This document shows positions 22,213-62,267 of a stretch of DNA of 64,000 nucleotides, in pieces; position 1 is the first letter of the stretch; every line of letters begins with the position of its first letter. The stretch is from IMG/VR virus record IMGVR_UViG_3300020178_000002, positions 124,001-188,000 of that record, one strand, 5' to 3'. The notes under the pieces were generated by a model, which was not told the origin of the DNA, ran no database searches, and worked only from the letters and a program-made list of their open reading frames with translations. Position numbers and translations under genes: made by a program.

Positions 22213-23049
22213 ATGAACAAAATACAGAGATTAGAAGCAAGAGTAGCTAGGCTTGAAAAAGAGTCTTTTATTTCGGCTCAAAAAGTATGGGATACAGCAA
22301 ACAGCATACTCCCTCAATTAAACAGGCTTAAGGGTGCTGCGAAAGAGCTGATTAGACTAGTGACAGGTGCTATACGCAGTGTTTGGGCAGAGTTGAATTT
22401 AATAGTTCGCAAGAAGAACAAGAAGAAGATACTTGGTTATTTGGAAGCTTCTTTTGAAGAAACTATAAAGAATGCTTTCCAGCCATTTGTCTCGGTGTCA
22501 GAGCCACCAGAGCTTGTGGCATTCTTGCCAGGCAATCTATTAGGTTCTACTTTTAGGTTCAAGAATAGGAAGTATCAGCTTAAAGAGTTATTAAGGCATG
22601 ATGCTGTGACAGGTCAAGGTGCTTACAATGCATATAATGAGTGGGTCACAGAGTATGGGTTATACTTGGACTATATGATGGATAAGTACCCAAGACCAGA
22701 CAGCAAAGTGGGCAAGAAGGTTGTTTATCAGATGATGGAGAACCTGAAAATAGGGAGACTTAGCAAACTTGCTTGGAAGTTTTTTAACATTTGGATAAAG
22801 GTAAGTTCCCAGATTGGTTTAGTGGTTGGTTTAGCGACAGCTTTATCTGCACTTTCTTTAGCTGTGGGTGTGAGAGGGGCAGTGAAAACATTTACTACTC
22901 TCCTTAATAATAAGATAGACAAGGAGATAGGTAAGACAGACTTAGCTAGTAATCCTTTGTTTGACCCTAACAAGACAGCCTCTCAAAGGAAGCTTTCATC
23001 TTTAGCTTTAGTGACCTTAGTGTTAGAGGACATTCACTATTCTTATTAG
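22213..23049 (+). CDS. Leader-tagged protein, distant member of the 27.8-32.7 kb hydrophobic paralog family
   Basis: Leader MNKIQRLEARVARLEKES; AYNEWVTEY matches AYxSWxxDY; hydrophobic stretch; KTAS before a short C-terminal tail. Confidence 0.75.
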   Translation: MNKIQRLEARVARLEKESFISAQKVWDTANSILPQLNRLKGAAKELIRLVTGAIRSVWAELNLIVRKKNKKKILGYLEASFEETIKNAFQPFVSVSEPPELVAFLPGNLLGSTFRFKNRKYQLKELLRHDAVTGQGAYNAYNEWVTEYGLYLDYMMDKYPRPDSKVGKKVVYQMMENLKIGRLSKLAWKFFNIWIKVSSQIGLVVGLATALSALSLAVGVRGAVKTFTTLLNNKIDKEIGKTDLASNPLFDPNKTASQRKLSSLALVTLVLEDIHYSY

Positions 23050-27846: not shown

Positions 27847-28947
27847 ATGAATAAAGTATCTGCACAGCAAATCAGATCTCTTGAGGTCAGAATAGCTAGG
27901 CTTGAAAAAGAAGCTGGCTTTCAAGAGTTTATGGAAAGTGTCTCTAGTACATTTAAAAGCATAGTTAACATTCCTAAAAACATGGTGATTAGGATAATAA
28001 ATGCTTTTAAAGAAATTTTTACAACTGTAGAACTGTCATTAGAAGACGAAGAAAAAACAATTGAAAATGCACTTGGCTTTTTATTGGGTTCTCGCATCTT
28101 TAGAGCAATGGCTGGAGTCATAACAACAACAGATGATTTGCCTACGATTGTTAAATTCAATAGGAAGCAGCCTTTAAAGTCTACATTCACGGGTGGGCTT
28201 GCAGGAAAGGCTAAGGTTCAATTAAAGAACCTTATTAAGCGTTATAATGAAACAAACCAGACAAGAATGAAGTCTGCCTATCTTTCATGGTATTCAGATT
28301 TCAAGCACATCCTAAACCCAAAAATTAAAGAAGTTGAGGGTGTTGAATTTGCACTTCGAGAAATCAAGAAGGTCTCAAAGTTAGCATATAGGTTCTTGTC
28401 TTCAATCATCTCTGTATTAGGTGGTGTTGTTGCTATTAAAGGGACAGTGATCTCAACTCTGCTATTTATACTAGGTAGGATCTTTTTGCAGAAGTATGGT
28501 TTTCCAGTAGGAAGACCTAGTGAATGGACTCAAAATGAAGTTGTTTTTTCAAAGGTCACTGTTGAACCCGTAAATGCTACTATACATAGGAATGTAATAG
28601 ACGTTACCAGAGATAGATATAGTGATTATAAGAAACTTTCTCCTATACAAAAGCAGATTTTTGTTGAAAAAATACATGCTAAGGTAGAACAACACCCAAT
28701 GAAAAATTGGCAACCAGATTCAGCAGCTAACCTTCAAGATGTTAAGGATTGGATTAGATGGAAGCCTATTCAGTTTACCACAGCAATCTTGACACCTATT
28801 TTAGCACTCATTGAAACAATTATGTACAAGTGGGTGATTAAGACAGACGAATATGATGAAATGGTAAAAGAGCTAGAATCAAGAAATAAGAAAGCTTCTC
28901 AATACCCAACACTCTCTTATTTAACTCAGATTTTAGAAGGCAGGTGA
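27847..28947 (+). CDS. Leader-tagged hydrophobic paralog 1
   Basis: MNKVSAQQIRSLEVRIARLEKEAG; STFTGG; two hydrophobic segments; KKASQYP tail. Confidence 0.85.
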   Translation: MNKVSAQQIRSLEVRIARLEKEAGFQEFMESVSSTFKSIVNIPKNMVIRIINAFKEIFTTVELSLEDEEKTIENALGFLLGSRIFRAMAGVITTTDDLPTIVKFNRKQPLKSTFTGGLAGKAKVQLKNLIKRYNETNQTRMKSAYLSWYSDFKHILNPKIKEVEGVEFALREIKKVSKLAYRFLSSIISVLGGVVAIKGTVISTLLFILGRIFLQKYGFPVGRPSEWTQNEVVFSKVTVEPVNATIHRNVIDVTRDRYSDYKKLSPIQKQIFVEKIHAKVEQHPMKNWQPDSAANLQDVKDWIRWKPIQFTTAILTPILALIETIMYKWVIKTDEYDEMVKELESRNKKASQYPTLSYLTQILEGR

Positions 28948-28950
28948 GAC

Positions 28951-30051
28951 ATGAATAAGGTATCAGCACAACAAATTAGATCTCTTGAGCTTAGGATAGC
29001 TAGGCTTGAAAAAGAGGCTGGCTTTATAGATGATATGGTAGGTGTCTTTAAAAAGACACTCAACATACCTAAGAATATGTTCTTAAAGATACTTTATGCC
29101 TTCAAAGAAGTTTATGATGATGTTGTTGTATGGAACACAGAATCAGAATCTAAGGCTATGGATTCATTAGGTGCATTATTGGGCATAAGAATATTTAGAT
29201 CTTTAGCTGGTGTTATAACTACAAGTGAGGGTTTACCTAAAATTGTCAAGTTCAACTACTCTGACCCTTTAAGCTCAACCTTCACAGGTGGACTTGCAAT
29301 GAAGTCTAATATCCCTCTTAAGAAGCTTATCAATATGTATGAGGGTGAGAACCAGACCAGAATGAAGAGAGCTTACACTTCATGGTATGCAGACTATAAA
29401 GAAATCATAAACCCTTCTGTCTCTGATAGAGAAGCGATTGATATTTTCTTAGATCTTTGTAAAAGAGGTGGGAAGTGGCTCTATCGCTTAATGACTGCCC
29501 TTATAGGTTTGGTTGGTATAGCGACTCTTAAGTCCACAGTCATATTCAACATCATTATTATGGTTGTACAGAGATATGTGCAGATAGGGATGTTTGATTT
29601 TCGAAATATGGATAAGAGAATTCTGGACTTCCAAGAAACAACAGTAAAGTATATAGACATAAAATCTGTTAAGTATCTTGAAGCAGAGGGTGTTATTGAA
29701 AACACTCACAAATTCATATCTGATGTTCTGGTTGGTGGGAGAGGGTATGTTCCTCGAAAAGAAGTAAAGGAATTTACTCTCGCTATTGTTGAAAAGCCCT
29801 TGCAGAAATACCAACCTATTGATTTTGTGTCTTGGAAAAAAGTTAGAGAGTACATGACACAAAACTACACTACCTTTATTGGTGTTTTCCTAACAGGATT
29901 CTTAGCTCTACTTGAGAAAGCACTTTATAAATGGGTCTTTAAAACAGAAGACTATGAAAAGATGAAAGCTGAAAGTGATGCAATGGGCAAGACAGCTTCT
30001 AAATACCCTGCAATTGCTTATATGGCTAGAAAGCTAGAAAGCTATTTATGA
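28951..30051 (+). CDS. Leader-tagged hydrophobic paralog 2
   Basis: Same leader; STFTGG; KTASKYP tail. Confidence 0.85.
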   Translation: MNKVSAQQIRSLELRIARLEKEAGFIDDMVGVFKKTLNIPKNMFLKILYAFKEVYDDVVVWNTESESKAMDSLGALLGIRIFRSLAGVITTSEGLPKIVKFNYSDPLSSTFTGGLAMKSNIPLKKLINMYEGENQTRMKRAYTSWYADYKEIINPSVSDREAIDIFLDLCKRGGKWLYRLMTALIGLVGIATLKSTVIFNIIIMVVQRYVQIGMFDFRNMDKRILDFQETTVKYIDIKSVKYLEAEGVIENTHKFISDVLVGGRGYVPRKEVKEFTLAIVEKPLQKYQPIDFVSWKKVREYMTQNYTTFIGVFLTGFLALLEKALYKWVFKTEDYEKMKAESDAMGKTASKYPAIAYMARKLESYL

Positions 30052-30632
30052 TATACTCGCTTCAATGTACCTACTCAAATGGCATAAGAATAAACTCTTT
30101 AAATATATCACTTGCTAATGGACAGTCTTTCGATTGCCCAAAGCAAACATATGATACTAATAAAGAAATCCAAGCTCTGGTGTCCTCTGGTATGTTGAAG
30201 CTAAAAGTAAAAGAACACAAGTCTGGCCTTAGAGCGAACTCTAATAAACGAGTTTTACGAAGCAACCCGACTAATGAGAGAGTTGTAGAGAGAGTTGTAG
30301 AGAGAGTTGTTGAATCCCCAATAGACATGGATGCAATCACTAGGAATGTAGTTGAGCAAATAGGTGCTGTACTATCTCCTGAGATATTGGCTCAAGCAAT
30401 TGCAGCACAACTCCCTACTGTCCAAGCTAATTACCCACAGAAAAATGAGGGTAATAGTTCTTTTATGTCTTCTAGTGAAGACAATCTAATGTTTATCCCC
30501 TCTACTATTGTAGATAGAAATACTGTTGCTTCTAAATCCTCTGCCTCTGAAAGCATATCGGAAGACTCTGATGGTCTTGCTGATGCTATGGCTGCTTTAA
30601 AAGCAATGAAAAAGAAGAAAGGTCAAACCTAA
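30048..30632 (+). CDS. Hypothetical protein with ERVV x3 repeat
   Basis: 194 aa, overlapping both neighbours; 12-bp coding repeat GAGAGAGTTGTA. Confidence 0.75.
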   Translation: MIYSLQCTYSNGIRINSLNISLANGQSFDCPKQTYDTNKEIQALVSSGMLKLKVKEHKSGLRANSNKRVLRSNPTNERVVERVVERVVESPIDMDAITRNVVEQIGAVLSPEILAQAIAAQLPTVQANYPQKNEGNSSFMSSSEDNLMFIPSTIVDRNTVASKSSASESISEDSDGLADAMAALKAMKKKKGQT

Positions 30633-31564
30633 TGAATAAAGTATCTGCACAGCAAATCAGATCTCTTGAAATGAGAATTGCCAGACTCGAAAGAGAGGCT
30701 GGTCTTAAAGAAATCTTTGATGACATCTCTGGATTTGTTAAAGGTGTTGTTAACATTCCTAAAAACTTCATCAAGAAAATCATCAATGTTTTCAAAGATG
30801 TTGGAAACAACCTAACTGTCCTTCTTTCAAAACAAGAAGATAGGATTGTTAGAGCCCTTAAATCTGCATTGGGAATCCGAGTAGCTGCGACTCTTGAAGG
30901 CTTTGTTATAGATACTAGAGATCTTCCTATCATTGTAGACTTTAATCTTATGAATCCTATTAAGTCTACTTTCACAGGTGGCAATGCAGGATCTTCAAAA
31001 GTATCTTTGGACAAGTTGGCATCTCTCTATGATGGAGAAGAAGCTAGAAGAATTAAGTCAGCTTTCCTTTCATGGAAATCAGACTACCTTCCTTCTTTAA
31101 ATGCATTACAAGGAAAAGATGATGTTGGAGTTATTAAGGGCTTTCTAAAACTGATACAAAGGTCATCTAAACTGCTTTACAGATTCTTGAAGATTGCTCT
31201 AAGCATATTCAGCATTGCCCAGCTTATTGCAGCACCTTGGGGATCTTGGGTTTTAGGTTTAGCTATGGTCTTCATAGGGAATCATAATATGTTGCCTATA
31301 TCAGCCGACTATACTCTTCTAACAGATAAGAGTCTAGCTAATATTATGGATGCCAAAGACTTCTTACCTCGTAATGAAGTTCCATTGTTGAAATCTTTTG
31401 GTCCTGCTATTATCACTACTGTTCTTAAGATTCTTGAAAAAGCATTCTATCGCTATGGTGTTAATGTTGATGCCTTTGACGAGGAATCTATGGGTAGAAC
31501 AGCTTCTCAATTCCCAAGAGTTGCTTCTGTAACTAGAAGACTCGAACACTACGCTTACGCTTAA
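30632..31564 (+). CDS. Leader-tagged hydrophobic paralog 3
   Basis: Same leader; STFTGG; RTASQFPRVAS tail. Confidence 0.85.
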   Translation: MNKVSAQQIRSLEMRIARLEREAGLKEIFDDISGFVKGVVNIPKNFIKKIINVFKDVGNNLTVLLSKQEDRIVRALKSALGIRVAATLEGFVIDTRDLPIIVDFNLMNPIKSTFTGGNAGSSKVSLDKLASLYDGEEARRIKSAFLSWKSDYLPSLNALQGKDDVGVIKGFLKLIQRSSKLLYRFLKIALSIFSIAQLIAAPWGSWVLGLAMVFIGNHNMLPISADYTLLTDKSLANIMDAKDFLPRNEVPLLKSFGPAIITTVLKILEKAFYRYGVNVDAFDEESMGRTASQFPRVASVTRRLEHYAYA

Positions 31565-31615
31565 TATCTTATTTATCATTAGCTTCCTGTGAAAAAAACA
31601 CAGGGGGCTGATGAT

Positions 31616-31747
31616 ATGACAAGATACCAGATGAAAAGATTAGAGATGAGGATTTCCAGAAAACTCGAAAGGAAGTCCAAACTTCAACTTCAGCGTATCT
31701 ATCAGAGATTAGCTTCTTTAGAAAAAGAGGTTAAATCCAATGAATAA
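31616..31747 (+). CDS. 43-aa peptide made of two leader-like motifs (not in the ORF track)
   Basis: MTRYQMKRLEMRISRKLERKSKLQLQRIYQRLASLEKEVKSNE; AGGGGG SD; own TA-N5-TTTAT motif. Confidence 0.65.
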   Translation: MTRYQMKRLEMRISRKLERKSKLQLQRIYQRLASLEKEVKSNE

Positions 31748-32669
31748 AGTATCTGCACAGCAAATCAGATCTCTTGAAATGAGAATAGCTAGACTTGAAA
31801 GAGAAGCTAGCTTTCAAGATGTTTTGGATGACATCAGTGGTTTTGTTAAAGGTGTTGTTAATATCCCTAAGAACTTTATTAAAAACATCATCAATGTTTT
31901 GAAGGATGTAGGTAACAACCTTAAAGCAACTTTTGCTGAACAGCGTGAAGTTATTTGTGAAGCCCTAGAGTCTGCATTGGGAATCCGAGTAGCTGCTACT
32001 CTACAAAACTTTATTGTAGATACCAGAGACATGCCTGTTATCGTTGAGCTCAATGTAATGAACCCAATCAAGTCGATATTCACAGGTGGTAAAGCTGGTT
32101 CTTCAAAGTATGCTCTTGATAAGCTGGCATCTCTTTATGACCGTGAAAGGTCTAAAAGAATCAAGTCTGCATACCTCTCTTGGAAGTCAGACTACTCTTC
32201 TCAAATAGATATTCTTCAAGGAAAATTTGATGAGTCTAACTCTGTTAAAAGATTAATGAAGTTTCTTCAAAGAAGCTCTAAGGTTGCTTATAGATTTTTC
32301 AAAGTTCTTTTCAGCATAGTCTCTATGACAGAGGTTATTGCAGCACCTTGGGGCTCTTGGATTATTGACCTAGCAACAATTACAGTAGGGTCACTTGATC
32401 TAATACCATTTTTACCAAAAGAGTCATGGACTCTTAGTAAAGTTGAAAGTATCACTGGTTTATCTTTCACTACCAATACCCTGAGTAAAAGTGTGGTCAA
32501 GACAATCCCTGCTACAATAGTCACCTCTGTTCTTAAGCTTCTTGAAAAAGCATTCTATCGCTATGGTGTTAATGTTGACGCTTTTGACGAGGAATCTATG
32601 GGTAGAACAGCTTCTCAATTCCCAAGAGTTGCTTCTATAACTAGAAGACTTGAAAACTATATCCTTTAG
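31740..32669 (+). CDS. Leader-tagged hydrophobic paralog 4
   Basis: Same leader; close paralog of 30632..31564 with a near-identical 3' end. Confidence 0.85.
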   Translation: MNKVSAQQIRSLEMRIARLEREASFQDVLDDISGFVKGVVNIPKNFIKNIINVLKDVGNNLKATFAEQREVICEALESALGIRVAATLQNFIVDTRDMPVIVELNVMNPIKSIFTGGKAGSSKYALDKLASLYDRERSKRIKSAYLSWKSDYSSQIDILQGKFDESNSVKRLMKFLQRSSKVAYRFFKVLFSIVSMTEVIAAPWGSWIIDLATITVGSLDLIPFLPKESWTLSKVESITGLSFTTNTLSKSVVKTIPATIVTSVLKLLEKAFYRYGVNVDAFDEESMGRTASQFPRVASITRRLENYIL

Positions 32670-33151: not shown

Positions 33152-34144
33152 ATGAGTAAAGGTGTAGGATTAGATATTGGAACTATGAACCTTGTTTCAT
33201 CAAGAATGAATAAGAAAGAAGTTTCAATCAGAAGAATGAGAGACTTGTTTATTGACCTGCCTGCTTCTGCAAAGAAAATGCTTAAGTTAGGTTCGGTTTC
33301 ATATATTGAGTCTGACGAGCATTTATTGGTTCTTGGCGATGAAGCTATGGAAGTTGCAAATATGTTCGGCAGAGAGGGTCGTAGACCCCTTAAAGCAGGT
33401 CTTGTCTCTCCAGACGAGATTGACTCCCTCACAGTTCTTGGTCACATGGTTAAAGATGTGCTTGGAGAGCCTTCACATGAGGGTGAGCATTGCTACTTCT
33501 CTATCCCAGCAGCACCTGTTGATGTTCAAATGGATGTTGTTTACCACAAGGGAGTATTTACTCGCATTGTTCAAGAATGTGGATATACCCCTCACCCAGC
33601 AAATGAAGCTATGGCTATTGTATTTGCAGAGACAGCTAAAGAGGGCTTCTCAGGCATTGGCATTAGTTTTGGTTCAGGTATGACCAACATTGCTCTTGCA
33701 ATTAACACCATTGAGGGTCTCAGCTTCTCAGTTGCTAGAGGTGGGGATTGGATTGACCAAGGTGCTGCAAGATCAGTTGGTGGTACAGCCTCTAAGATGT
33801 GTGCTGTCAAAGAGAAAGGCATTGACCTTAATGCACCTAAGAATAGAGAAGAAGAAGCAATCTCCTTTTACTATAAGGCTTTGATTGAACATGCTCTTGA
33901 TAACATTGCTCAACAGTTTGTAATGAAGGGTGGACACCTTACTCTCAACAAGCCTATTCCAATTGTAGTAGGTGGTGGAACAAGTCTAGCTGGTGGGTTC
34001 ATGGATTTCTTTAGAGAGGTCTTTGAAACTAAGCGTAAGCGTTTCCCTATCGAGATCTCTGAGGTACGTCATGCTTCTGACCCATTCCATGCAGTTAGCA
34101 AGGGTATGTTAGTTCTTGCCCAACAAGAGTATGACGAGGATTGA
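33152..34144 (+). CDS. Actin-fold (MreB/FtsA/ParM superfamily) ATPase
   Basis: Phosphate-1 GLDIGTMN, connect NEAMA, phosphate-2 GISFGSGMTNI, adenosine VVGGGTSL; AAGGAG SD. Confidence 0.85.
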   Translation: MSKGVGLDIGTMNLVSSRMNKKEVSIRRMRDLFIDLPASAKKMLKLGSVSYIESDEHLLVLGDEAMEVANMFGREGRRPLKAGLVSPDEIDSLTVLGHMVKDVLGEPSHEGEHCYFSIPAAPVDVQMDVVYHKGVFTRIVQECGYTPHPANEAMAIVFAETAKEGFSGIGISFGSGMTNIALAINTIEGLSFSVARGGDWIDQGAARSVGGTASKMCAVKEKGIDLNAPKNREEEAISFYYKALIEHALDNIAQQFVMKGGHLTLNKPIPIVVGGGTSLAGGFMDFFREVFETKRKRFPIEISEVRHASDPFHAVSKGMLVLAQQEYDED

Positions 34145-34150
34145 TTAAAC

Positions 34151-39292: not shown

Positions 39293-40195
39293 ATGAAAGT
39301 CAACTTCAAAGGAAGAGAGGTCTCTCTAACAACCGTTGAAAACTACGCTTCAGACAAGAGACATCCCGACCACAAAGACGCAGTTTCGTTCTTAAAGAAG
39401 AGTGAGAACGAAAAAAAGCCCTCACAGCAGAAGAAGCAGGTTGGATTCGACAACTACAAAAGACAGGGTGTTTCCGAATTGAGAGACCCTAAGAAGCTCC
39501 AAGAAATAGAGAGCCTCGCAAAGAAGCTAAAAGTGAAGCCAAATGCAGACGATGCTCATATGTCAGAAAGTTTGGTGCGTTCTGAAGGAGTTTTCAACGA
39601 CTACTCTTTGCAAAATGCAGGGGCTGAGAAGATATTTGAACCAGAGATGGAGGGAGAACTTCAAGATCTCCTTTATCCTGATGAAGCCCAAGTACATGAC
39701 TATGATGTGTACCACTTCGGAAAGATCAAAGTCCCCACTTTAAAAGAGCTTGAGTCTGCATATGAGGCAGATCTAGAAGCTGGTAAGTACGACAATGTTT
39801 ATGAAAAAGACCACGAAGCGGTGATCAAATATGTTAGGAAGAATTTTGAAGACATTAAAGCAGCCTTCGAGAAACAAAACCAAATTCGTGAGTTAAGGCA
39901 GCAGATCGAATCTGAAAAGAATGATGTACAAGAACGAGCCGAGACAAGATCAGACCAGCTAAAGAAGTTGATCGAGGTTTCTGAAAGCCTTGAAGACCTA
40001 AAGATGTTTGAGGATGAGATAGTAGAGTTGTCAAAGACTTATCTGGAAGGCGAGTCTCTTCTATCAGACAAGTCACTTGAAAAAACATTCAAGAAAAAGA
40101 GGAAAGGTCTTAAAAAGAATGCCTCTTTGAAGATAGCTTCCTATGTTCTCTCTCATATTAAAGAAGAGATAAAGAGCCTTAAGACCACCTTGTAA
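39293..40195 (+). CDS. Charged helical protein, probable head-internal protein
   Basis: K/E-rich; C-terminal KNASLKIAS tail; TA-N5-TTTAT upstream. Confidence 0.6.
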   Translation: MKVNFKGREVSLTTVENYASDKRHPDHKDAVSFLKKSENEKKPSQQKKQVGFDNYKRQGVSELRDPKKLQEIESLAKKLKVKPNADDAHMSESLVRSEGVFNDYSLQNAGAEKIFEPEMEGELQDLLYPDEAQVHDYDVYHFGKIKVPTLKELESAYEADLEAGKYDNVYEKDHEAVIKYVRKNFEDIKAAFEKQNQIRELRQQIESEKNDVQERAETRSDQLKKLIEVSESLEDLKMFEDEIVELSKTYLEGESLLSDKSLEKTFKKKRKGLKKNASLKIASYVLSHIKEEIKSLKTTL

Positions 40196-49364: not shown

Positions 49365-49985
49365 ATGAGTAATGAGAAAGATATGGGTTTGTTGCCTATC
49401 ATGAGTCCCTTATACAATCTAAGGGAGATTACTAAACAAATGGCTCTACTAGAAGACCATTTGAACCACCCTCGAAAAAGATGTCCTGACTGTATCCGAA
49501 AACATTTTTTAACAATAGAAGCTCTTTTTGAAGAAGCAGTCTCCTTAGACAAAACATTTGAATATGGTGAATACTTGGATGGCAAAGCCCAGACTATGAG
49601 AGATATGCAAGCTCATTGGTTAGATAATGATGGTGATGATAGCTATCTAGAGCTTGCACAAGGACTCAGGGCAATCCGAAAAGACTTTGCCCCTATTTGT
49701 TTTGATGTTAGAAAAATGGCAAGTACAAGAAGTCACATCTGTTCTGTCTATAAAGGTCGGCTTTTTTTTTCAACAAAAACCACAACAGAGGTTGAGGAAG
49801 AGAAAATAGAGTCTCTTGTTAGAAAAAACCCTACAAAAAAGCCACCTCGAAAAGACCTTCGAAAAAATAGGTATGAAATGCCAGATCAAGATTTAGAGGG
49901 TACAGGCAGAGGCGATGGTGGAGACAGGGATTTGTCTCGCAGAGACCATAAGATGGCTAGGAACATTCTTAAAAGATGGTGTTGA
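49365..49985 (+). CDS. Two-part hypothetical protein with H/CxxC/H metal-binding N-domain
   Basis: NLREITKQMALLEDHL...RCPDCIRKHFLTIE; RKMAS linker; basic C-terminal part. Confidence 0.75.
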   Translation: MSNEKDMGLLPIMSPLYNLREITKQMALLEDHLNHPRKRCPDCIRKHFLTIEALFEEAVSLDKTFEYGEYLDGKAQTMRDMQAHWLDNDGDDSYLELAQGLRAIRKDFAPICFDVRKMASTRSHICSVYKGRLFFSTKTTTEVEEEKIESLVRKNPTKKPPRKDLRKNRYEMPDQDLEGTGRGDGGDRDLSRRDHKMARNILKRWC

Positions 49986-49986
49986 T

Positions 49987-52744: not shown

Positions 52745-54133
52745 ATGGCATTTTTAAGGTACGCAAAAGCTAATGTAGTTCGCCCTCAAGTACACGGGCT
52801 AGATTGGGACAAAGTAAGAGTTGCTTCTGGTAATAGGCAACTAAACCAATCTTTAAAGAAAAAAGCTGAAGATATTCTAGGGGAGGCATTTACCCCAGAT
52901 AGATTTCTTTTAACACATGCTACTATCGTATGTTCTGTAGATTCTGTAACGCCTCCAAATACAAAAACAGGATCTATTAAAGAAGGTGGCTTTACTATAA
53001 ACAGAAAGTATTCTGATTACAGAATCTCAAAGGAGACTGACAAGTATATTAATAATAACCTAGACTCATGGTCTAGAGGTGTTATTAAAAGATCTTATCA
53101 GACTTTCATAGGTTCTCATAACTTTGTAGAGCATGTTCAAGTAGAAGAGCTTTCTAAGGGCAAAATCATTGATGCTGTTTTAAGAGACATTGGTGAAAGC
53201 CTCTATGTAGATATTCTAGTAGCTACTGATAGGAAACACAAAGACCTTGTAGAGCAGATTCTCTCTGGCCAGATGAACTCTATGTCTATGGGTTGTTCAG
53301 TCGATTTTACTATTTGTACTAAATGTGGTCACGTTGCAGCAGACGAAACTGAAATGTGTTCACATGTGAAGTATGAAAAAGGAAATACATTCTTTGATGA
53401 CCAAGGCAATAAGCACAGAGTTGCTGAGTTATGTGGTCACGAAGATGTGGGTGAGACTGCTGGTGTTACTTTTATTGAGGCTTCTTGGGTTGCAACTCCT
53501 GCTTTTCCAGGTGCGGTTGCTAGAAATACCATTGAAATACCCTCTTCTGATAACCCCTCAGAAGTTCCTTCAAAATGGGTAGATAAATCTGCAAGCCTTT
53601 CTTTAACTTCTGCTTTTGGAATGGAAGAAGAAGAAGAATCTGAAGAAGGTGGAGATAAAGAACCAGCAGACGAGTCTCTCCTTAAGAAGCTAGATTCAGT
53701 ATATGAGCAAGCTATCATAGACAGATTCAAGAATAAGCTTGAAACTGAGATGAAGAAAGAGAAAGCTCAAGAGAAACTCTATCCTCCCACAAGTCAATCT
53801 TCTGTAGCCCAGAACGACACTGTGATTAAAGAAGGAAAGAAAGTCTCAACCAGAGAGTATACTAAAGCATTAGATATTTCTGTAAAGACAGCTTCTAATT
53901 TAGAAGAAGCACTCTTTAACATTGCTTTAGTAAACAATCACTTTGGTGTCAGCATCCCTTCTCACCTTTATAAGATAGCCAGTAAGCTAGGAAGCACTTC
54001 TAAATATGCATCTGTTCAAGATTATATTGAGAAAGCTGTAAGCCTACATGGTAAAGCATTATCGGAGAAAGATTCTTTCATCTTAATTCGGTTAGCAAAA
54101 ATAACATCCCTTAACAACTTCGGGCAGAAATAA
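52745..54133 (+). CDS. Prohead maturation protease (HK97/herpes assemblin-like) with Zn-binding insertion
   Basis: Start moved to ATG 52745 (AAGGAG SD); NFVEH, GKIIDA, SMSMGC, CTKCGH...CSH, FIEASWVATPAFPGA; upstream of scaffold and capsid genes. Confidence 0.8.
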   Translation: MAFLRYAKANVVRPQVHGLDWDKVRVASGNRQLNQSLKKKAEDILGEAFTPDRFLLTHATIVCSVDSVTPPNTKTGSIKEGGFTINRKYSDYRISKETDKYINNNLDSWSRGVIKRSYQTFIGSHNFVEHVQVEELSKGKIIDAVLRDIGESLYVDILVATDRKHKDLVEQILSGQMNSMSMGCSVDFTICTKCGHVAADETEMCSHVKYEKGNTFFDDQGNKHRVAELCGHEDVGETAGVTFIEASWVATPAFPGAVARNTIEIPSSDNPSEVPSKWVDKSASLSLTSAFGMEEEEESEEGGDKEPADESLLKKLDSVYEQAIIDRFKNKLETEMKKEKAQEKLYPPTSQSSVAQNDTVIKEGKKVSTREYTKALDISVKTASNLEEALFNIALVNNHFGVSIPSHLYKIASKLGSTSKYASVQDYIEKAVSLHGKALSEKDSFILIRLAKITSLNNFGQK

Positions 54134-54169
54134 AGTCTTGCCCTCTACGATATGAAAGGACTATGCCTT

Positions 54170-55819
54170 ATGTCTAGGTATTCCCGTTCTAAGTCTCGCA
54201 TGACTTCAGCTCGAAAAAGTCGTGTTCGCAAAGCAACCTCATCAGTTCCAGGTTATGATAATCTAGGTTGGGATCACTTCGGTCACCCTGCTTCAGCAGA
54301 ACAACCAGATCTTGAAGAATATGGTATTGATTCTGATTTCGGTGAAGGTGTTCGCAAAGGTCCTTATGAGGACAGCCCTGCACCTGCTTCTTACTCATGG
54401 GAGCCTGATCACCCTGCACACTCAAAGAAAGCTCTAAAGAGTGCTATGGAGCGTAAAGCTGCTAAGTGCATTCGTATTGCTGAGTCTCGTCTTGGTAAGT
54501 TTGCTTCTCAACGTGAGATCGAAGATCTTGCACTTCGCTTCATGGATCTTCCTAACAGTGTAATCAACTCAAGAGTTGCTAGCATTGAAGACCCAATGGC
54601 TGAAGAAATTGATGCTATGCATGATATGTATGCAGAAGACATTGATCCAATGGCTGAAGAAGTCGAAGGTATGATGTACGCAGAAGACCCTATGGCTGAA
54701 GAGGTTGAAGGCATGATGTATGCTGAAGACCCTATGGCTGACCTTATGTATGACGACATGGATGACGACATGGGTATGATGGCAGACCTTATGGATGACT
54801 CTATGGATGATTCTATGGATATGATGGCAGACCTTATGGATGACTCTATGGATGATTCTATGGATATGATGGCAGACCTTATGGATGATTCTATTGATGA
54901 CGACATGGATATGATGGCTGACCTTATGGATGATGACATGGGTGATTCTATTGATGACGACATGGGTATGATGGCTGAAAGTCTTTTCGCTATGGAGCAT
55001 GACGCTATGGAGCATGACGCTATGGAGCATGGCATGTTTGCAAGCATTGATGAGCCTGTAGCAGACGACATGGGCGACATCATGGCAGACTTGTTTGGAG
55101 AAGAAACTGAGAGTGAAGCTGATATCCTAGCTGACGAAGTTGCTAGTCTTAAAGCTGCAAATGCCAGACTAGCTCGCAAAGTAAGAAATCTTAGCAGAAC
55201 TGTAAACGCTTCTAAAGCAGAGGAAGTAAAAGCAGAAGAGACTGAGGCAGAAGAAACTGAAAGCACCGAAGAGAAAGTAGCTCGTATCGAGAGACTTGCA
55301 AACGCTTTAGCTGACTACATGGCTGAGATGGAGCGTACTGCTGCTGAAGAGGAAGAAGCTAAAGAGGAAGAAGCTCCTAAAGAAGAAGCTAAAGAAGAAG
55401 CTCCTAAAGAGGAAGCTAAAGAAGAAGCTCCTGCTGAGAAGAAAGCTTATAACTCAATGGCAGATATTCTTGCAGAGCTTGAAGTAGAGAGTGAAGAAGT
55501 TGATCCTATGGCAGAAGAGCTTGAGCCTGTAGCTGAAGACCCAATGGGACTAGACAGTGTGGCTGACATGCAAATTGATGCTCGTCTTGCTTCTATCTTC
55601 ACTGCTGGTGAAGAAGGTGAAGTTGCAGAAGAAACTGAAGCAGAAGAAACTGAAGCAGAAGAAACTGATGCTGGTAAGAAAGCTTCATATCGCCCAAGCA
55701 CTCAAGCTCGTCAAGCATCTGTAAAGACTCTTGGAAACATCAGTCGTGAAGCTTCAAGCTCTGATGAACTCAGCAAGCTTTGGGAATCTGCTCCAGACGT
55801 AAGCAAATTCTTCGGTTAA
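54170..55819 (+). CDS. Capsid scaffold-like acidic protein with Met/Asp repeats
   Basis: Start moved to ATG 54170; highly acidic, low complexity, coiled coil; between protease and capsid genes. Confidence 0.75.
   Translation: MSRYSRSKSRMTSARKSRVRKATSSVPGYDNLGWDHFGHPASAEQPDLEEYGIDSDFGEGVRKGPYEDSPAPASYSWEPDHPAHSKKALKSAMERKAAKCIRIAESRLGKFASQREIEDLALRFMDLPNSVINSRVASIEDPMAEEIDAMHDMYAEDIDPMAEEVEGMMYAEDPMAEEVEGMMYAEDPMADLMYDDMDDDMGMMADLMDDSMDDSMDMMADLMDDSMDDSMDMMADLMDDSIDDDMDMMADLMDDDMGDSIDDDMGMMAESLFAMEHDAMEHDAMEHGMFASIDEPVADDMGDIMADLFGEETESEADILADEVASLKAANARLARKVRNLSRTVNASKAEEVKAEETEAEETESTEEKVARIERLANALADYMAEMERTAAEEEEAKEEEAPKEEAKEEAPKEEAKEEAPAEKKAYNSMADILAELEVESEEVDPMAEELEPVAEDPMGLDSVADMQIDARLASIFTAGEEGEVAEETEAEETEAEETDAGKKASYRPSTQARQASVKTLGNISREASSSDELSKLWESAPDVSKFFG
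54590..55030 (+). repeat. Coding tandem repeats (EDPMAEEVEGMMYA; 45-bp MADLMDDSMDDSMDM; 15-bp AMEHD)
   Basis: Exact 45-bp units at 54779-54823 and 54824-54868, plus degenerate copies. Confidence 0.9.
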
Positions 55820-56563: not shown

Positions 56564-57442
56564 ATGAGTAATACAGTTGATAATTCAGTAAAACAAAAGA
56601 TCATTAGCGACTACATCAAGACCCCTCAAGGTCGTGCAAAGCTAGCTGCTTCAATGACTCAACCTCTTCGTCTTCGCCGTGACTATACAAGCGTTGGTCG
56701 TAAGACCTTCCTTGTTGAGCAACTTCCTGATGGTGCGTTGCCTATTTACGACAAAGACCCAGACGTAACAGCTTTCGTAGTTGGTGAAGAAGGCGAGAAC
56801 ATTCTTGCTATCACCAAGCCTCGTCGTGTTATCTTCCCTCTCTTTGAGATTGCTTCTAACCCTGAGATTCCTTTAACTCAGATCAAGGAAAGACGCTTCG
56901 ATCTTATCGAGAGAGCACAGGATCTTGCTAGAGCACAAATTCAGGCTGCTGAAGACGAGCGTGTATTCGCTATTCTTGACGCAGTTGCAGCTAATGGTTT
57001 CGACAGCGTTTCTGGTCAAACCAATGCTGACATTCCTGTTATCGCTCCTCTTAATGGTGCTGTTCTTGCTGACGCATACAGCCTAATTGAGAGACATGAC
57101 CTTAGAGTTGCCCGTGTATTTATGAATGCTAGAGACTATGCTGACATTCGTAAGTTCGGTCGTGACATTCTCGATATCGAGAGTCAAGCAGCCCTTCTCA
57201 AGACAGGTCTACAAGCAACTCTTTGGGGTGCTCAAATCATCACAAGTCGTCTTGTTCCTGTTGGTACAGTTTATGTTTGTTGTGAGCCAGAAATGTTCGG
57301 TCGTATCCCTGTTCGTACAGAGTTGACTGTTCTTTCTGCTGACGATCCAAAAGCTCGTACAATCGGCTTCTCTTGCTTCGAGAATCTAGGTATCGGTGCT
57401 TATAACCCTCGTGGTCTTGCTAGACTTACTGTTACTCGCTAA
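56564..57442 (+). CDS. Major capsid protein (HK97 fold)
   Basis: 292 aa; PLFEIASNPEI...RRFDLIERAQ...IQAAEDERVF, VFMNARDYADIRK, LWGAQIITSRLVPVG; strongly biased codons; terminator follows. Confidence 0.88.
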   Translation: MSNTVDNSVKQKIISDYIKTPQGRAKLAASMTQPLRLRRDYTSVGRKTFLVEQLPDGALPIYDKDPDVTAFVVGEEGENILAITKPRRVIFPLFEIASNPEIPLTQIKERRFDLIERAQDLARAQIQAAEDERVFAILDAVAANGFDSVSGQTNADIPVIAPLNGAVLADAYSLIERHDLRVARVFMNARDYADIRKFGRDILDIESQAALLKTGLQATLWGAQIITSRLVPVGTVYVCCEPEMFGRIPVRTELTVLSADDPKARTIGFSCFENLGIGAYNPRGLARLTVTR

Positions 57443-58249: not shown

Positions 58250-58786
58250 ATGAGGATCTTTCTGTTTTTACTATTCTTGACCCTTCCCTTATCTGCTCAT
58301 GCAGAAGAAGAACCTATACATAGACCTTGGGAAGCTAGTCTTGGTAATACCCAAATGTTTATTGGCTGGTATAAAAAGGGTTCTTACCCTGTACCAACTT
58401 CTTCTGCCACTTTAATTCTTTCAAGAGAAGTGGTTTTTGACTTCTCATTGTGGGCTGTATTCAATCTCCCTCTTAATTCTAACAGAAGAGTTACAGAAGA
58501 GGGTTTACTTGTAGAGAGCCAAACACCACCTACTTTTATGTTAGGTCTTAGTTATGAGTTTATCAGGTATGGAATGAGTGAGGGTAGGAGTCTAGGTCTT
58601 GATGCAGGATTTTCTGTAGGTAGACCTCTAACTCTTGAGGGTCAACTCTTTCCTGTAGGTGCGTTTAGATTAAAACTCCTTACAAAACAAGATAGCTCTA
58701 TGTATGCTGGAATAACAACCTCACCTTATAACCCAGAGGGTGATTTGGTTTGGGGCTTGATCTCTGGCATGGGATATAAGTTTTAA
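58250..58786 (+). CDS. Secreted, probable outer-membrane beta-barrel protein
   Basis: Signal peptide ending AHA; alternating amphipathic strands; C-terminal GMGYKF. Confidence 0.6.
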   Translation: MRIFLFLLFLTLPLSAHAEEEPIHRPWEASLGNTQMFIGWYKKGSYPVPTSSATLILSREVVFDFSLWAVFNLPLNSNRRVTEEGLLVESQTPPTFMLGLSYEFIRYGMSEGRSLGLDAGFSVGRPLTLEGQLFPVGAFRLKLLTKQDSSMYAGITTSPYNPEGDLVWGLISGMGYKF

Positions 58787-60899: not shown

Positions 60900-62267
60900 A
60901 TGGAAGCTCCAGAAATAGACAAAAGAACTTTAAACTTCAAAGACAGGTCTTTGTCAGAGTTTCAAAAGTTAATCAAGTCTCTAAAAAAGTACTCTGATCA
61001 GATTAAATCAGAAATAGATGAGGACACCAAGAGACTTAGAGAACTGAAGATTCTTTTAGAGAGCCTTCCTCAAGTTAGAAACTATATTAGAAAGTTTGTA
61101 GGTCCTCTTAGAGAAGATACGTTTAAGTCAAAGAGGAATAAGACCCTGAAGCTATTAGCTGAGAACCTGTTAGGTCTGAAAACTTTAGAAGAGGTCTTGG
61201 CTGAAAAGGAAAAGATTGCTCTCAAGTCTAGGAGAGACATTCAACTTTATAAAGGTCAGAAAGAATACTTGAAGATCATACCTAAAGAGATAAGGGTATT
61301 CTTGCCAGATACTATCACAATAGATGTAGATTCAGAGGGTAGGGTAAAGAGAATAGGTGAGTTGTTTGCGAACAAGACTTATACGCTCACAGAAAAGCTC
61401 TCTAATCAACGAAAACTCTTAGAGAGGTATAGTGACATAAGTTCCTCACTAAAAAGCGGTCTAAGCTCAAATAAAGAGCAGGAGAGGATTTCATCACTTA
61501 TTAGCTTAATAATATTAGAGACAGGTATTCGACCAGGTAGAAAAGGAAACAGAATCTTAAAAGATGAAGATGAGATTCAGACATTTGGTGCAACTACTCT
61601 AAGAAGAAGCCATGTTAAGTTTTTGAGTGATGGTACAGCCCAGCTTACTTTTAAAGGTAAGAAAGGTGCAACAAACAAAGCCATTGTTAGAGACTCTGAT
61701 GTGGTTTCAGAGTTAAAAAGAATCTCAAAGAGTTGTAAGGGGGAAGACTGTCTCTTTAAGTATGAAGATGGTTCAGATTACACTTACTCCCACCTCAAAG
61801 ATTTCTTTAACAAAAACTTTGAGGGTCTAAAGATCACAGACTTTAGAAAGTTAAGAGCAACAGAAGAAGTATTTAACTTACTCAAAGAAGAAAGAAACAA
61901 CTTACTTTCAAAAATAAAATCCTATTCTGACTTAGAAGCAGCAGAGGCAGAGAAGAAGACTGTAGCTGAAATCTGTAAGGTTTTAACTAAAGCCCATGAG
62001 CAGGCACAGATAGCCCTGTCACATGATTCTTCTAGGACTACAAAACAATCTTACATAAACCCAGAAGTCATTCTTCACTTCTTAAGCACGGCAAACTTGA
62101 AAGGGTCTTTAAAAGACACTATTCTAAAAGGAAAGACGAAACTACACTTTGATCCTCAAATGTTTTTAAGGCAGTCTCAAAGAGTAGCTTCGTCTTTTAA
62201 ATTTTCTGGTGAAGTATCAGGGTTCACCCTACATAACATGGTAGAATTGTTAGAACACATTATTTAA
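60900..62267 (+). CDS. DNA topoisomerase IB (poxvirus/bacterial type)
   Basis: Catalytic pentad visible in GIRPG, FKGKKG, DFRKLRAT, LSH and KQSYINP; FGATTL motif. Confidence 0.88.
   Translation: MEAPEIDKRTLNFKDRSLSEFQKLIKSLKKYSDQIKSEIDEDTKRLRELKILLESLPQVRNYIRKFVGPLREDTFKSKRNKTLKLLAENLLGLKTLEEVLAEKEKIALKSRRDIQLYKGQKEYLKIIPKEIRVFLPDTITIDVDSEGRVKRIGELFANKTYTLTEKLSNQRKLLERYSDISSSLKSGLSSNKEQERISSLISLIILETGIRPGRKGNRILKDEDEIQTFGATTLRRSHVKFLSDGTAQLTFKGKKGATNKAIVRDSDVVSELKRISKSCKGEDCLFKYEDGSDYTYSHLKDFFNKNFEGLKITDFRKLRATEEVFNLLKEERNNLLSKIKSYSDLEAAEAEKKTVAEICKVLTKAHEQAQIALSHDSSRTTKQSYINPEVILHFLSTANLKGSLKDTILKGKTKLHFDPQMFLRQSQRVASSFKFSGEVSGFTLHNMVELLEHII

What the first reader, a model, noticed from the sequence alone, without database searches (positions are those of the whole stretch)
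52745..55819. [KR]-x-A-[SAG] motif saturates protease, scaffold and cargo: predicted maturation cleavage code
Seen in the scaffold: RKAT, KKAL, KFAS, RVAS, KVAR, RTAA, KKAY, RLAS, KKAS, RQAS, REAS. In the protease: RVAS before the catalytic domain, and KSAS, KTAS, KIAS, KYAS after it. Tagged proteins end their leaders in KEAG, REAG, REAS, KEAA, KTAM or KSAR. Short C-terminal tails begin with KTAS (22213, 28951), KKAS (27847), RTAS/RVAS (30632, 31740), KNAS/KIAS (39293) and RVAS (topoisomerase IB). KMAS splits 49365 into two parts. Established: herpesvirus assemblin, which shares the fold of HK97-type prohead proteases, cuts after Ala in x-x-A|S. Inference: this protease cuts [KR]-x-A|[SAG] and trims cargo at one or both ends.
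Basis: partly seen in the sequence, partly recalled or inferred. Interest (0 to 1): 0.8.

Follow-up and report, generated by a model that had tools for sequence, protein, structure and literature searches.

The report
Jumbo-phage head protease cleavage motif
In this uncultivated 312-kb phage the four-residue motif Lys/Arg-any-Ala-Ser is too frequent, too precisely placed and too well conserved around the head protease, the scaffold and many tagged proteins to be chance. It most likely marks where the protease cuts during capsid maturation, a herpesvirus-like specificity for which I found no report in a phage.

Summary
Among all 8000 a-x-b-c patterns in the genome's 331 ORFs, RxAS and KxAS rank 4th and 5th. 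Together they occur 131 times against 57 expected, and 100 against 47 after paralogue control. Only this spacing, Ala at the third position and Ser at the fourth are enriched.

- **Protease and scaffold:** the protease has 5 sites (0.44 expected) and the scaffold 6 (0.62 expected).
- **Conservation:** across 56 relatives the sites flank the protease catalytic domain and are depleted inside it. Scaffold sites at residues 118 and 534 persist in 83% and 96% while the second position varies freely.
- **Tails:** sixteen protein families carry a site 10-30 residues from the C-terminus, against 4.2 expected.
- **Fold:** the protease model resembles herpesvirus assemblins (Z up to 9.4).
- **Other phages:** Tunturi_5 and, more weakly, phage G show related K-x-A-[AS] enrichment. 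A more distant Erwinia jumbo phage shows none.

Cleavage itself and the scissile bond remain inferred. Ala or Gly at the fourth position appears only as a substitution at orthologous sites. Only 8 of 29 N-terminal leaders end in the canonical motif. I rate this a new variant of a known kind, a prohead-protease cleavage code.

The parts
52745..54133 (+). Head maturation protease, 462 aa. Disordered N-terminus (residues 1-33), catalytic domain (34-264) with a Cys/His zinc-ribbon-like insert, disordered linker (265-317), C-terminal helical domain (369-454).
   Evidence: phrog_18299 'head maturation protease', E 1.3e-16. AF2 model. Its top 13 structural matches are herpesvirus proteases, Z 6.8-9.4. 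S181 and H58 are invariant in 41 relatives. The ATG at 52745 matches the start used by relatives.
52817..52828 (+). RVAS, protease residues 25-28. Predicted N-terminal autoprocessing site.
   Evidence: The motif is present at this column in 54 of 56 relatives: first position R 54, second variable, third A 54, fourth S 39, A 14, G 1. It lies in the pLDDT<50 segment 1-33.
53585..53596 (+). KSAS, protease residues 281-284. Predicted release site after the catalytic domain.
   Evidence: 46 of 56 relatives have at least one site in the linker, against 0.22 sites per sequence expected. Only 6 of 56 have one in the catalytic domain. The linker is disordered in the model. Tunturi_5 (KVAS 265) and phage G (KVAS 248, KIAS 274) have sites in the same place.
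53885..54013 (+). KTAS (381-384), KIAS (410-413) and KYAS (420-423) in the protease C-terminal helical domain.
   Evidence: Column occupancy is 50%, 41% and 11%. KTAS and KYAS fall between predicted helices and KIAS inside helix 406-415, so use of these sites is uncertain.
54152..55819 (+). Scaffold protein, 555 aa, acidic with Asp/Met-rich tandem repeats. It has eight [KR]xA[SAG] sites.
   Evidence: No family match. It lies between the protease and the decoration and capsid genes. [KR]xA[SAG] is 8 against 1.9 expected, p 4e-4.
54452..54508 (+). RKAA (101-104) and KFAS (116-119) in the conserved N-terminal scaffold domain.
   Evidence: KFAS column: 83% of 54 relatives, first position K27/R21, second position 8 or more different residues, third A52, fourth S45/T7. 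RKAA column: 76%, but inside a block where every position is conserved, so it is not diagnostic.
54572..54583 (+). RVAS, scaffold residues 141-144.
   Evidence: Present in 26% of relatives at this column.
55334..55345 (+). RTAA, scaffold residues 395-398. Weak candidate.
   Evidence: Only 9% of relatives have the motif at this column.
55583..55594 (+). RLAS, scaffold residues 478-481.
   Evidence: Present in 31% of relatives at this column.
55676..55756 (+). KKAS (509-512), RQAS (520-523) and REAS (532-535). This cluster would detach the last 21-46 residues of the scaffold.
   Evidence: REAS column: 96% of 54 relatives, first position R38/K15, second E/T/V/Q/A, third A54, fourth S46/A5/G2. KKAS column: 69%, plus 15% one column away. 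RQAS column: 35%. The position resembles the herpesvirus maturational site near the scaffold C-terminus (PMC4498786).
49713..49724 (+). KMAS, residues 117-120 of ORF 49365-49985, at the end of its conserved N-terminal domain.
   Evidence: Most relatives keep [KR]xAS just after this domain, with a variable second position. In some relatives the domain is fused to proteins of more than 1000 aa.
27847..32669 (+). Four paralogous tagged proteins (27847, 28951, 30632, 31740). Each has an N-terminal leader ending in KEAG, REAG or REAS (residues 21-24) and a C-terminal tail starting at KKAS, KTAS or RTAS, 16-21 residues from the end.
   Evidence: Both boundary motifs are kept in 14 homologues down to 34% identity, while the hydrophobic middle region varies.
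22972..22983 (+). KTAS at the start of the 22-residue C-terminal tail of ORF 22213-23049, which also carries a leader.
34067..34078 (+). RHAS at the start of the 22-residue C-terminal tail of ORF 33152-34144.
40115..40141 (+). KNAS and KIAS at the start of the C-terminal tail of ORF 39293-40195.
62181..62192 (+). RVAS, 25 residues from the C-terminus of the topoisomerase IB homologue (60900-62267).
   Evidence: Pfam Topoisom_I, E 3.6e-17. Site position.
56639..56650 (+). KLAA, residues 26-29 of the major capsid protein. Uncertain as a site.
   Evidence: Kept in 98% of 54 relatives, but the whole N-terminus is conserved. Phage G has RVAL at this position.

Best explanation
Lys/Arg-x-Ala-Ser, with Ala or Gly tolerated in place of Ser, is the recognition motif of this phage's assemblin-fold prohead serine protease.

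Proposed sequence of events inside the procapsid:
1. The 462-aa proenzyme frees its catalytic domain (about residues 28-283). It cuts in the disordered N-terminus (RVA/S) and in the linker that joins the domain to a C-terminal helical docking domain (KSA/S).
2. It cuts the scaffold at its conserved N-terminal domain (KFA/S) and at a C-terminal cluster (KKA/S, RQA/S, REA/S). This detaches the last 21-46 residues, which presumably hold the shell.
3. It trims targeting appendages from packaged proteins: the N-terminal leader helix (..LE.R[IV]ARLE) where it ends in the motif, and short C-terminal tails that begin with the motif.

Shown: the statistics, the placement, the conservation and the fold. 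Inferred: that the motif is cut, that the bond is Ala|Ser (by analogy with assemblin), and that tagged and tailed proteins are capsid cargo.
For: **Specificity.** RxAS and KxAS rank 4th and 5th of 8000 patterns. Neighbouring patterns are near 1. The excess survives paralogue control (100 against 47) and trimming of both protein ends (61 against 31).

**Placement around the protease.**
- Among 56 relatives a site is present in the N-terminus in 55, in the linker in 46 and in the catalytic domain in 6, where it is depleted (0.12 against 0.37 per sequence).
- Among the 150 best representatives of 50%-identity clusters, 93 of 112 have a site in the N flank and 101 of 148 in the C flank. About 0.22 would be expected.
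- Both flanks are disordered in the AF2 model.

**Conservation.** Scaffold sites are conserved with a basic first position, a free second position, Ala at the third and Ser>Ala>Gly at the fourth.

**C-terminal tails.** Sixteen families have a site 10-30 residues from the C-terminus, against 4.2 +/- 2.0 expected.

**Fold.** The model's top 13 matches are herpesvirus proteases, Z 6.8-9.4. S181 and H58 are invariant. Inteins in relatives sit within the catalytic domain, including at or near the motif that holds S181.

**Relatives and control.**
- Tunturi_5: KxAA ranks 1st and KxAS 26th of 8000. The densest proteins are annotated 'DNA ejection protein', 'DarB-like antirestriction protein', 'virion structural protein' and the scaffold. 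Six neighbouring proteins gp335-340, 2845 aa in all and several annotated as tail proteins or tail fibres, have none.
- Phage G: KxAS is 63 against 38.6.
- The Erwinia phage control shows no enrichment.

**Precedent.** SPN3US gp245 cuts itself and many head proteins at a short motif, A-X-E (PMC10052503). Herpesvirus proteases have a release site and a maturational site (PMC4498786).
Against: - There are no proteomic or biochemical data for this phage or, as far as I could find, for its clade.
- Only 8 of 29 leaders end in the canonical motif.
- Leaders often also begin with a motif-like [KR]-x-A-S at residues 2-6, where a cut would seem to achieve little.
- Some instances lie in predicted helices or are not conserved.
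- Ala and Gly at the fourth position are not enriched genome-wide.
- LR745208, the nearest relative among deposited phage records (MCP 89%), shows only 1.3-fold genome-wide enrichment.
- A UvrD-like helicase, not an obvious head protein, carries six sites.
- Foldseek E-values for the fold match are weak on their own.
Confidence: 0.68

Rival explanations
1. The motif is an uncleaved short docking motif. It would bind the scaffold, the shell interior or a chaperone and mark the edges of targeting helices, while the protease cuts elsewhere.
For: - It sits next to leader and tail helices.
- Leaders also start with a motif-like sequence, where cutting seems pointless.
- Half of the leaders lack the canonical motif at their end.
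Against: - A docking motif would not be expected on both sides of the protease catalytic domain, in disordered linkers, while being depleted inside the domain.
- It would not be expected many times within the scaffold and within 'ejection' proteins.
- Small residues at the third and fourth positions with a free second position are typical of a protease subsite pattern.
Confidence: 0.13
2. The protease does recognise the motif, but the cut bond or the main determinant differs from Ala|Ser. It could be after the basic residue, as HK97 gp4 cuts after Lys, or after Ser.
For: The sequence alone cannot place the bond. Known phage prohead proteases cut after Glu or Lys (PMC10052503; HK97 from general knowledge).
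Against: - Invariant Ala followed by Ser>Ala>Gly is the pair that assemblins cut (established knowledge).
- The fold match is to assemblins.
- The residue after the basic position is unconstrained.
Confidence: 0.1
3. The motif is a phosphorylation site of a basophilic Ser/Thr kinase (R/K-x-x-S).
For: A basic residue three places before Ser fits the R-x-x-S class.
Against: - No Pkinase domain is found in the genome.
- Ser is replaced by Ala or Gly at orthologous sites, for example 15 of 56 at protease site 27.
- [KR]xAT is not enriched, 31 against 35.5.
- Ala before the Ser is invariant.
Confidence: 0.04
4. The excess is a by-product of composition, helix propensity or shared ancestry of paralogues, and has no function.
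For: Several hits come from two 11-member paralogue families. The dipeptide AS is itself 1.2-fold enriched.
Against: - The excess survives paralogue control and trimming of both protein ends.
- Only the exact spacing is enriched.
- The Erwinia jumbo phage shows none.
- Positions are conserved across 42-77% identical relatives while flanks and the second position vary.
Confidence: 0.05

Closest known systems
Herpesvirus assemblin (pUL26 / UL80a protease) with its release and maturational sites
   Same: - The fold matches (Z 6.8-9.4 to VZV, PrV, HSV, HCMV and KSHV proteases).
- A Ser and a His are conserved.
- The protease domain is followed by a linker and a C-terminal assembly domain.
- One predicted site lies just after the protease domain and one about 20 residues from the scaffold C-terminus (PMC4498786).
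- Ala then Ser occupy the positions assemblins cut between (established knowledge).
   Different: - There is no detectable sequence similarity.
- The third residue before the presumed cut is basic here, whereas the herpes consensus is (V/L)-x-A|S or Y-(V/L)-(K/Q)-A|S.
- The scaffold is a separate gene, not a nested in-frame one.
- The protease has a Cys/His insert.
- The host is bacterial.
- Dozens of further putative substrates exist.
Cleavage codes of T4 gp21 (L/I-x-E) and of phiKZ gp175 / SPN3US gp245 (A-x-E)
   Same: A short motif is used for self-processing, scaffold or inner-body breakdown and removal of propeptides from many packaged proteins, with several sites per propeptide (PMC10052503).
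   Different: - The residue before the cut is Ala, not Glu, and a basic residue is needed two places earlier.
- Many predicted cuts remove C-terminal tails, whereas SPN3US cuts give N-terminal propeptides apart from the one from self-cleavage (PMC10052503).
- Nothing is verified experimentally.
T4 capsid targeting sequence of the internal proteins IPI-III and Alt
   Same: A short N-terminal leader shared by unrelated packaged proteins ends at a protease site (general knowledge; T4 review PMC9026906 not read in detail).
   Different: - The leader here is a 20-residue helix (..LE.R[IV]ARLE) on 29 proteins.
- Its end is canonical in only 8 of them.
- A second, C-terminal, tag class seems to exist.
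Head maturation proteases of phage G (gp19), Tunturiibacter phage Tunturi_5 (gp331) and Bxz1-like mycobacteriophages (Cali gp93)
   Same: They are homologous catalytic domains. Tunturi_5 and phage G have [KR]xA[SA] on both sides of the domain.
   Different: - Tunturi_5 prefers K-x-A-[AS], with KxAA the top pattern of its proteome.
- Phage G shows Lys only and a weaker excess.
- In Cali the protease is fused to a 1286-aa protein.
- I found no published cleavage sites for any of them.

Membership tests
Assemblin-fold prohead serine proteases (HK97 gp4 / T4 gp21 / herpesvirus assemblin superfamily) | Characteristic fold of the catalytic domain | tested here: met
   The AF2 model has pLDDT 80-95 over residues 40-255. 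The 13 best VIA-align matches are all herpesvirus proteases: Z 6.8-9.4, rmsd 2.4-4.7 A (at most 3.9 for the first twelve) over 107-130 residues. The next unrelated match scores 5.5. Foldseek alone is weak, E 0.3-1.5.
Assemblin-fold prohead serine proteases (HK97 gp4 / T4 gp21 / herpesvirus assemblin superfamily) | Conserved catalytic Ser and His | tested here: inconclusive
   S181 (in SMSMGC) and H58 are invariant in 41 relatives, and H130 is also invariant. Inteins in relatives interrupt the domain at about residues 181-183.
Assemblin-fold prohead serine proteases (HK97 gp4 / T4 gp21 / herpesvirus assemblin superfamily) | Gene next to the scaffold and major capsid genes | tested here: met
   The order is protease, scaffold, decoration-like protein, MCP (phrog_2522, E 8.5e-51). 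The order is the same in relatives.
Assemblin-fold prohead serine proteases (HK97 gp4 / T4 gp21 / herpesvirus assemblin superfamily) | Match to a curated sequence family (Pfam Peptidase_S78, S77 or S21) | tested here: not met
   No Pfam family matches at E<=0.01. There is no S78 match in the genome and no PDB sequence relative. Only PHROG families match: phrog_18299 'head maturation protease' and phrog_2774. It is a divergent lineage.
Prohead-protease cleavage code (as in T4, phiKZ, SPN3US) | Motif on both sides of the protease's own catalytic domain (self-processing) | tested here: met
   with disordered flanks in the model.
Prohead-protease cleavage code (as in T4, phiKZ, SPN3US) | Several motif copies in the scaffold or core proteins | tested here: met
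   The scaffold has 8 against 1.9 expected, with conserved columns. Tunturi_5 gp332 has 9 and gp328 has 14.
Prohead-protease cleavage code (as in T4, phiKZ, SPN3US) | Motif at the junction between targeting peptides and mature packaged proteins | tested here: inconclusive
   C-terminal tails are clear: 16 families against 4.2 expected. Among N-terminal leaders only 8 of 29 are canonical and 23 of 29 have LE-[KR]-x-[AS].
Prohead-protease cleavage code (as in T4, phiKZ, SPN3US) | Peptide bonds at the motif are cut in mature virions | not testable with these tools
   This needs virion mass spectrometry or an in vitro assay. The phage is an uncultivated IMG/VR record.
Assemblin-type Ala|Ser specificity | Ala before and Ser after the cut bond | tested here: inconclusive
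   Ala is invariant and the next residue is Ser>Ala>Gly at conserved sites. Only A-S with a basic residue two places before the Ala is enriched. Which bond is cut is not known.
Basophilic kinase phosphorylation sites (R/K-x-x-S/T) | Ser and Thr interchangeable, acceptor never lost, and a kinase present | tested here: not met
   [KR]xAT is not enriched. Ser is replaced by Ala or Gly at orthologous sites. No Pkinase domain is found.

The most novel reading that the evidence does not exclude
A widespread clade of mostly uncultivated large phages, with at least 315 50%-identity protease clusters at E<=1e-30 and reaching Tunturi_5 and phage G, uses a prohead protease with herpesvirus-like Ala|Ser specificity gated by a basic residue two places before the Ala. 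It combines this with two removable address tags, an N-terminal helix and a C-terminal tail that may mimic the scaffold's shell-binding end. These would load dozens of enzymes into the capsid for injection, including topoisomerase IB, a JmjC-type hydroxylase and a UvrD-like helicase.
Probability: 0.45. Interest if true: 0.72.

Novelty: new variant of a known kind. Interest (0 to 1): 0.6.

Why it matters
Experimentally established phage prohead-protease specificities cut after Glu (T4, phiKZ, SPN3US) or Lys (HK97). An Ala-Ser site in a phage enzyme of the assemblin fold would extend the phage-herpesvirus kinship from fold to substrate recognition.

A short, readable code also turns raw genomes of this uncultivated clade into predictions. 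It would indicate which proteins are packaged, where their mature ends lie, and which enzymes are probably injected.

The removable leader and tail could serve as tags for loading foreign proteins into capsids, as the T4 targeting sequence has. The prediction can be tested at once on two cultured relatives.

Tried and rejected
- **Sequence families:** Pfam on the protease and scaffold gave nothing useful. Peptidase_S78 is not in the genome. A profile search of PDB sequences gave only spurious low-complexity matches.
- **Literature:** searches on cleavage sites in phage G, Tunturi_5 or related jumbo phages found nothing on this clade. The phage G multi-omics paper used fully tryptic searches only.
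- **Close relatives in records:** megablast against deposited phages found no close relative.
- **Cargo orthologues:** orthologues of the cargo genes downstream of the MCP (59199, JmjC, topoisomerase IB) were not present in the head-region loci of relatives. Conservation of their sites could not be tested.
- **Cargo structure:** the AF2 model of cargo paralogue 30632 was too poor (pLDDT 54.6) to judge site accessibility.
- **Tail helices:** a test of whether C-terminal tails are unusually amphipathic was not significant (p 0.11).
- **The 783-aa protein with 10 sites:** it has no family and no informative Atlas neighbour.
- **Glu-type code:** the top genome pattern AxLE comes from the leader core RIARLE and does not flank the protease domain. 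I therefore rejected a Glu-type code.
- **DNA-level motif:** rejected because codons within the motif follow background usage.
- **MCP KLAA:** left undecided. It is conserved, but inside a fully conserved N-terminus, and is absent in phage G.


Full report
**Context**

The window is bases 124001-188000 of a 312,136-bp uncultivated IMG/VR phage record with direct terminal repeats and 38% GC. The finding covers two adjacent genes.
- ORF 52745-54133 matches PHROG 18299, 'head maturation protease' (E 1.3e-16), and has no Pfam family.
- ORF 54152-55819 is a 555-aa acidic protein with no family, here called the scaffold.
- These are followed by a decoration-like ORF and the major capsid protein (phrog_2522, E 8.5e-51).

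The capsid protein is 89% identical to that of uncultured phage LR745208, 47% to Tunturiibacter phage Tunturi_5 and 38% to Bacillus phage G gp27.

I called 331 non-overlapping ORFs on the whole genome and scored all 8000 patterns a-x-b-c against protein-specific composition.
- RxAS (54 against 21.4) and KxAS (77 against 35.6) rank 4th and 5th.
- The top pattern, AxLE, comes from an N-terminal leader discussed below.
- The signal is very specific. [KR]xAS is 131 against 57 (z 9.8). [KR]AS, [KR]xxAS and [KR]xxxAS are 1.25-1.3-fold.
- Replacing Ala by Gly, Ser, Thr, Val or Cys gives 0.74-1.14. Replacing Ser by Thr, Asn, Ala, Gly, Asp or Glu gives at most 1.0. Ser is therefore the enriched fourth residue, not the class [SAG].
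- Codons used inside the motif follow background usage, so this is not a DNA-level repeat.
- With one member per paralogue family the excess remains, 100 against 47. It also remains in protein interiors, 61 against 31.
- In 5000 shuffles the protease has 5 against 0.44 (p 2e-4) and the scaffold 6 against 0.62 (p<2e-4).
- MCP, decoration protein, tail sheath (1603 aa), the 942-aa upstream protein and the portal have none.
- An Erwinia jumbo phage with a more distantly related protease, used as an outside control, shows no enrichment: KxAS 26 against 26.5 and RxAS 15 against 24.7.

**Placement and conservation**

A scan of viral contigs with the protease returned 80 loci, giving 54-56 distinct relatives with 42-77% protease identity.
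- In their proteases, [KR]xA[SAG] occupies the column of window residue 27 in 96%. The first position is R in 54, the second varies, the third is A in 54, and the fourth is S 39, A 14, G 1.
- By region, 55 of 56 have a site in the N-terminal 35 residues and 46 of 56 in the linker after the catalytic domain. 49 of 56 have one in the C-terminal domain. Only 6 of 56 have one in the 225-residue catalytic domain, which is fewer than expected.
- An AlphaFold2 model built on 41 sequences gives a confident catalytic domain (residues 34-264). Both flanks that hold RVAS and KSAS are disordered. A helical C-terminal domain spans 369-454.
- A full HMMER search of 1.84 billion cluster representatives found 1777 family members. 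Among the best 150, 93 of 112 have a site in the N flank and 101 of 148 in the C flank, against about 0.22 expected.
- In the scaffold, columns 534 (REAS, 96%), 118 (KFAS, 83%) and 511 (KKAS, 69% plus 15% one column away) are conserved. The first position is basic, the third is Ala, the fourth is Ser>Ala>Gly or Thr, and the second is unconstrained. This is the signature expected of a recognition motif rather than of a structural element.
- RKAA at 101-104 sits in a block where everything is conserved, so it is uninformative.
- The KMAS of ORF 49365 lies at the end of a conserved N-terminal domain and is kept, with a variable second position, in most relatives. In some relatives this domain is fused to proteins of more than 1000 aa.

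**Cargo**

Twenty-nine proteins in the genome start with a shared leader of the form ..LE.R[IV]ARLE.
- 8 of 29 leaders end in [KR]xA[SAG], and seven of those eight belong to one paralogue family. 15 end in [KR]xA. 23 have LE-[KR]-x-[AS].
- In relatives the leader is more often followed by a clean motif such as KQAS, RQAS, REAS or GRTAS.

C-terminal tails give a stronger signal.
- [KR]xAS lies 10-29 residues from the C-terminus 29 times, against 2-4 per 10-residue bin elsewhere.
- This involves 16 independent families against 4.2 +/- 2.0 in shuffles.
- The tails include those of a topoisomerase IB homologue and of a UvrD-like helicase outside the window.
- In one cargo family both boundary motifs persist down to 34% identity while the hydrophobic middle varies.

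**Relatives with names**

- **Tunturi_5:** KxAA is the top pattern of all 8000 (87 against 41) and KxAS ranks 26th. Its protease has KTAA before and KVAS after the domain. The site-dense proteins are annotated by the depositors as 'DNA ejection protein', 'DarB-like antirestriction protein', 'virion structural protein', plus the scaffold-position gene and one hypothetical protein. Six neighbouring proteins, gp335-340, totalling 2845 aa and several of them annotated as tail proteins or tail fibres, have none.
- **Phage G:** KxAS is enriched 1.6-fold (63 against 38.6). Sites flank the gp19 protease domain and lie near both ends of the portal.
- **LR745208:** only 1.3-fold genome-wide, but 20 against 5.5 in its head locus.

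The code appears to be a clade character whose first and fourth positions drift.

**Fold and known systems**

- Foldseek against the PDB gives only weak matches, but most of the top 15 are herpesvirus proteases.
- Re-alignment gives Z 6.8-9.4 for 13 herpesvirus protease entries, above 5.5 for the next unrelated chain.
- S181 (the second Ser of SMSMG) and H58 are invariant.
- Many relatives carry one to three inteins inside the catalytic domain, some at about residue 181-183. This fits a functionally central motif.
- Herpesvirus proteases release themselves at a site after the protease domain and cut the scaffold near its C-terminus (PMC4498786). Their Ala|Ser specificity is established knowledge.
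- SPN3US gp245 gives the phage precedent for a short code, A-X-E, used for self-cleavage and for many head proteins (PMC10052503).

**Mechanism proposed**

1. The proenzyme is co-assembled through its C-terminal helical domain.
2. It frees its catalytic domain at RVA/S and KSA/S.
3. It cuts the scaffold at KFA/S and at the C-terminal cluster, detaching the last 21-46 residues.
4. It removes leaders and tails from cargo.

The statistics, placement, conservation and fold are shown. The cutting, the exact bond and the packaging of tagged proteins are inferred.

**Rivals**

- An uncleaved docking motif (0.13).
- A different scissile bond within the same motif (0.10).
- Kinase sites (0.04), contradicted by Ser-to-Ala or Gly substitutions, no Thr enrichment and no kinase domain.
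- A non-functional by-product (0.05), contradicted.

**Verdict**

- It is a new variant of a known kind, a prohead-protease cleavage code with assemblin-like Ala-Ser and a basic residue two places before the Ala.
- It can be tested directly on cultured Tunturi_5 and phage G.
- Interest 0.6.

Noticed in passing
window 22213-34523, 47055, 59199, 59903 and elsewhere in the genome: Twenty-nine proteins of unrelated families share an N-terminal leader of about 20 residues, of the form ..LE.R[IV]ARLE-[KR]-x-[AS]. It makes AxLE the most over-represented a-x-b-c pattern in the genome (94 against 37). The scaffold contains similar segments (RVASIE, KVARIE). It looks like a capsid-targeting tag.
   Followed up: partly
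window 59909-59920 (RIAS, residues 3-6 of the JmjC protein); also leaders in relatives, e.g. MRRSASE and MRRTASE: Leaders often begin, as well as end, with a [KR]-x-A-S-like sequence. A cut there would remove only 4-5 residues. The cleavage model does not explain this.
   Followed up: no
window 60900-62267, 59903-60802; genome G000:C1:201998-205123: A topoisomerase IB homologue has a C-terminal tail after RVAS. A JmjC/cupin hydroxylase has an N-terminal leader. A UvrD-like helicase has six sites and a C-terminal tail. All three may be packaged and injected enzymes.
   Followed up: partly
genome G000:C1:257191-259542 (minus strand), outside the window: A 783-aa protein with no detectable family carries 10 [KR]xA[SAG] sites against 1.8 expected, spaced 30-100 residues apart. 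It would be cut into about 11 pieces, like an inner-body or internal head protein.
   Followed up: partly
window 54650-55031 and 55343-55432: The scaffold gene holds tandem DNA repeats with periods of 42, 45/90, 15 and 27 bases. They encode Asp/Met-rich and Glu/Ala/Lys-rich peptide repeats. The nearest deposited relative (LR745208) lacks the Asp/Met array.
   Followed up: partly
window 53315-53365 (protease residues 191-207): Invariant C191, C194, C205 and H207 form a zinc-ribbon-like insert inside the catalytic domain. Herpesvirus proteases are not known to have one.
   Followed up: no
proteins P0016, P0022, P0025, P0050, P0061 and many others: Protease genes of many relatives are interrupted by one to three inteins (Hint plus LAGLIDADG domains). 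Insertion points are near window residues 103-107, 122-128 and 181-193, the last at or near the catalytic-serine motif.
   Followed up: partly
window 49365-52743: ORF 49365-49985 overlaps the longest reading of the next ORF. That ORF more likely starts at 49987. In some relatives the two are one fused protein. The 942-aa product is not a recognisable portal. Its last 180 residues (zinc ribbon plus a small beta domain) form a separate conserved ORF in distant relatives. The real portal lies outside the window at G000:C1:243860-245527 (minus strand).
   Followed up: partly
window 27847-32669 (paralogues) and alignment A5: The tagged paralogue family has a variable middle with two long hydrophobic, transmembrane-like segments. 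This would fit ejection proteins that insert into the host membrane.
   Followed up: no
L089 6902-10762 (Mycobacterium phage Cali gp93): The gene annotated 'tape measure' carries the head-protease domain at its N-terminus, fused to a 1286-aa protein just upstream of the capsid gene. This arrangement resembles a herpesvirus protease-scaffold fusion.
   Followed up: partly
window C-terminal tails, e.g. 28888-28947, 29989-30051, 62181-62267: Tails after the motif often end in a hydrophobic residue plus Glu within the last 12 residues: 13 of 23 against 52 of 234 other proteins. They loosely resemble the scaffold's own last 21 residues and may mimic the scaffold's shell-binding end.
   Followed up: partly
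window 58250-58786: An ORF with a clear N-terminal signal peptide sits in the head gene cluster just downstream of the capsid gene.
   Followed up: no
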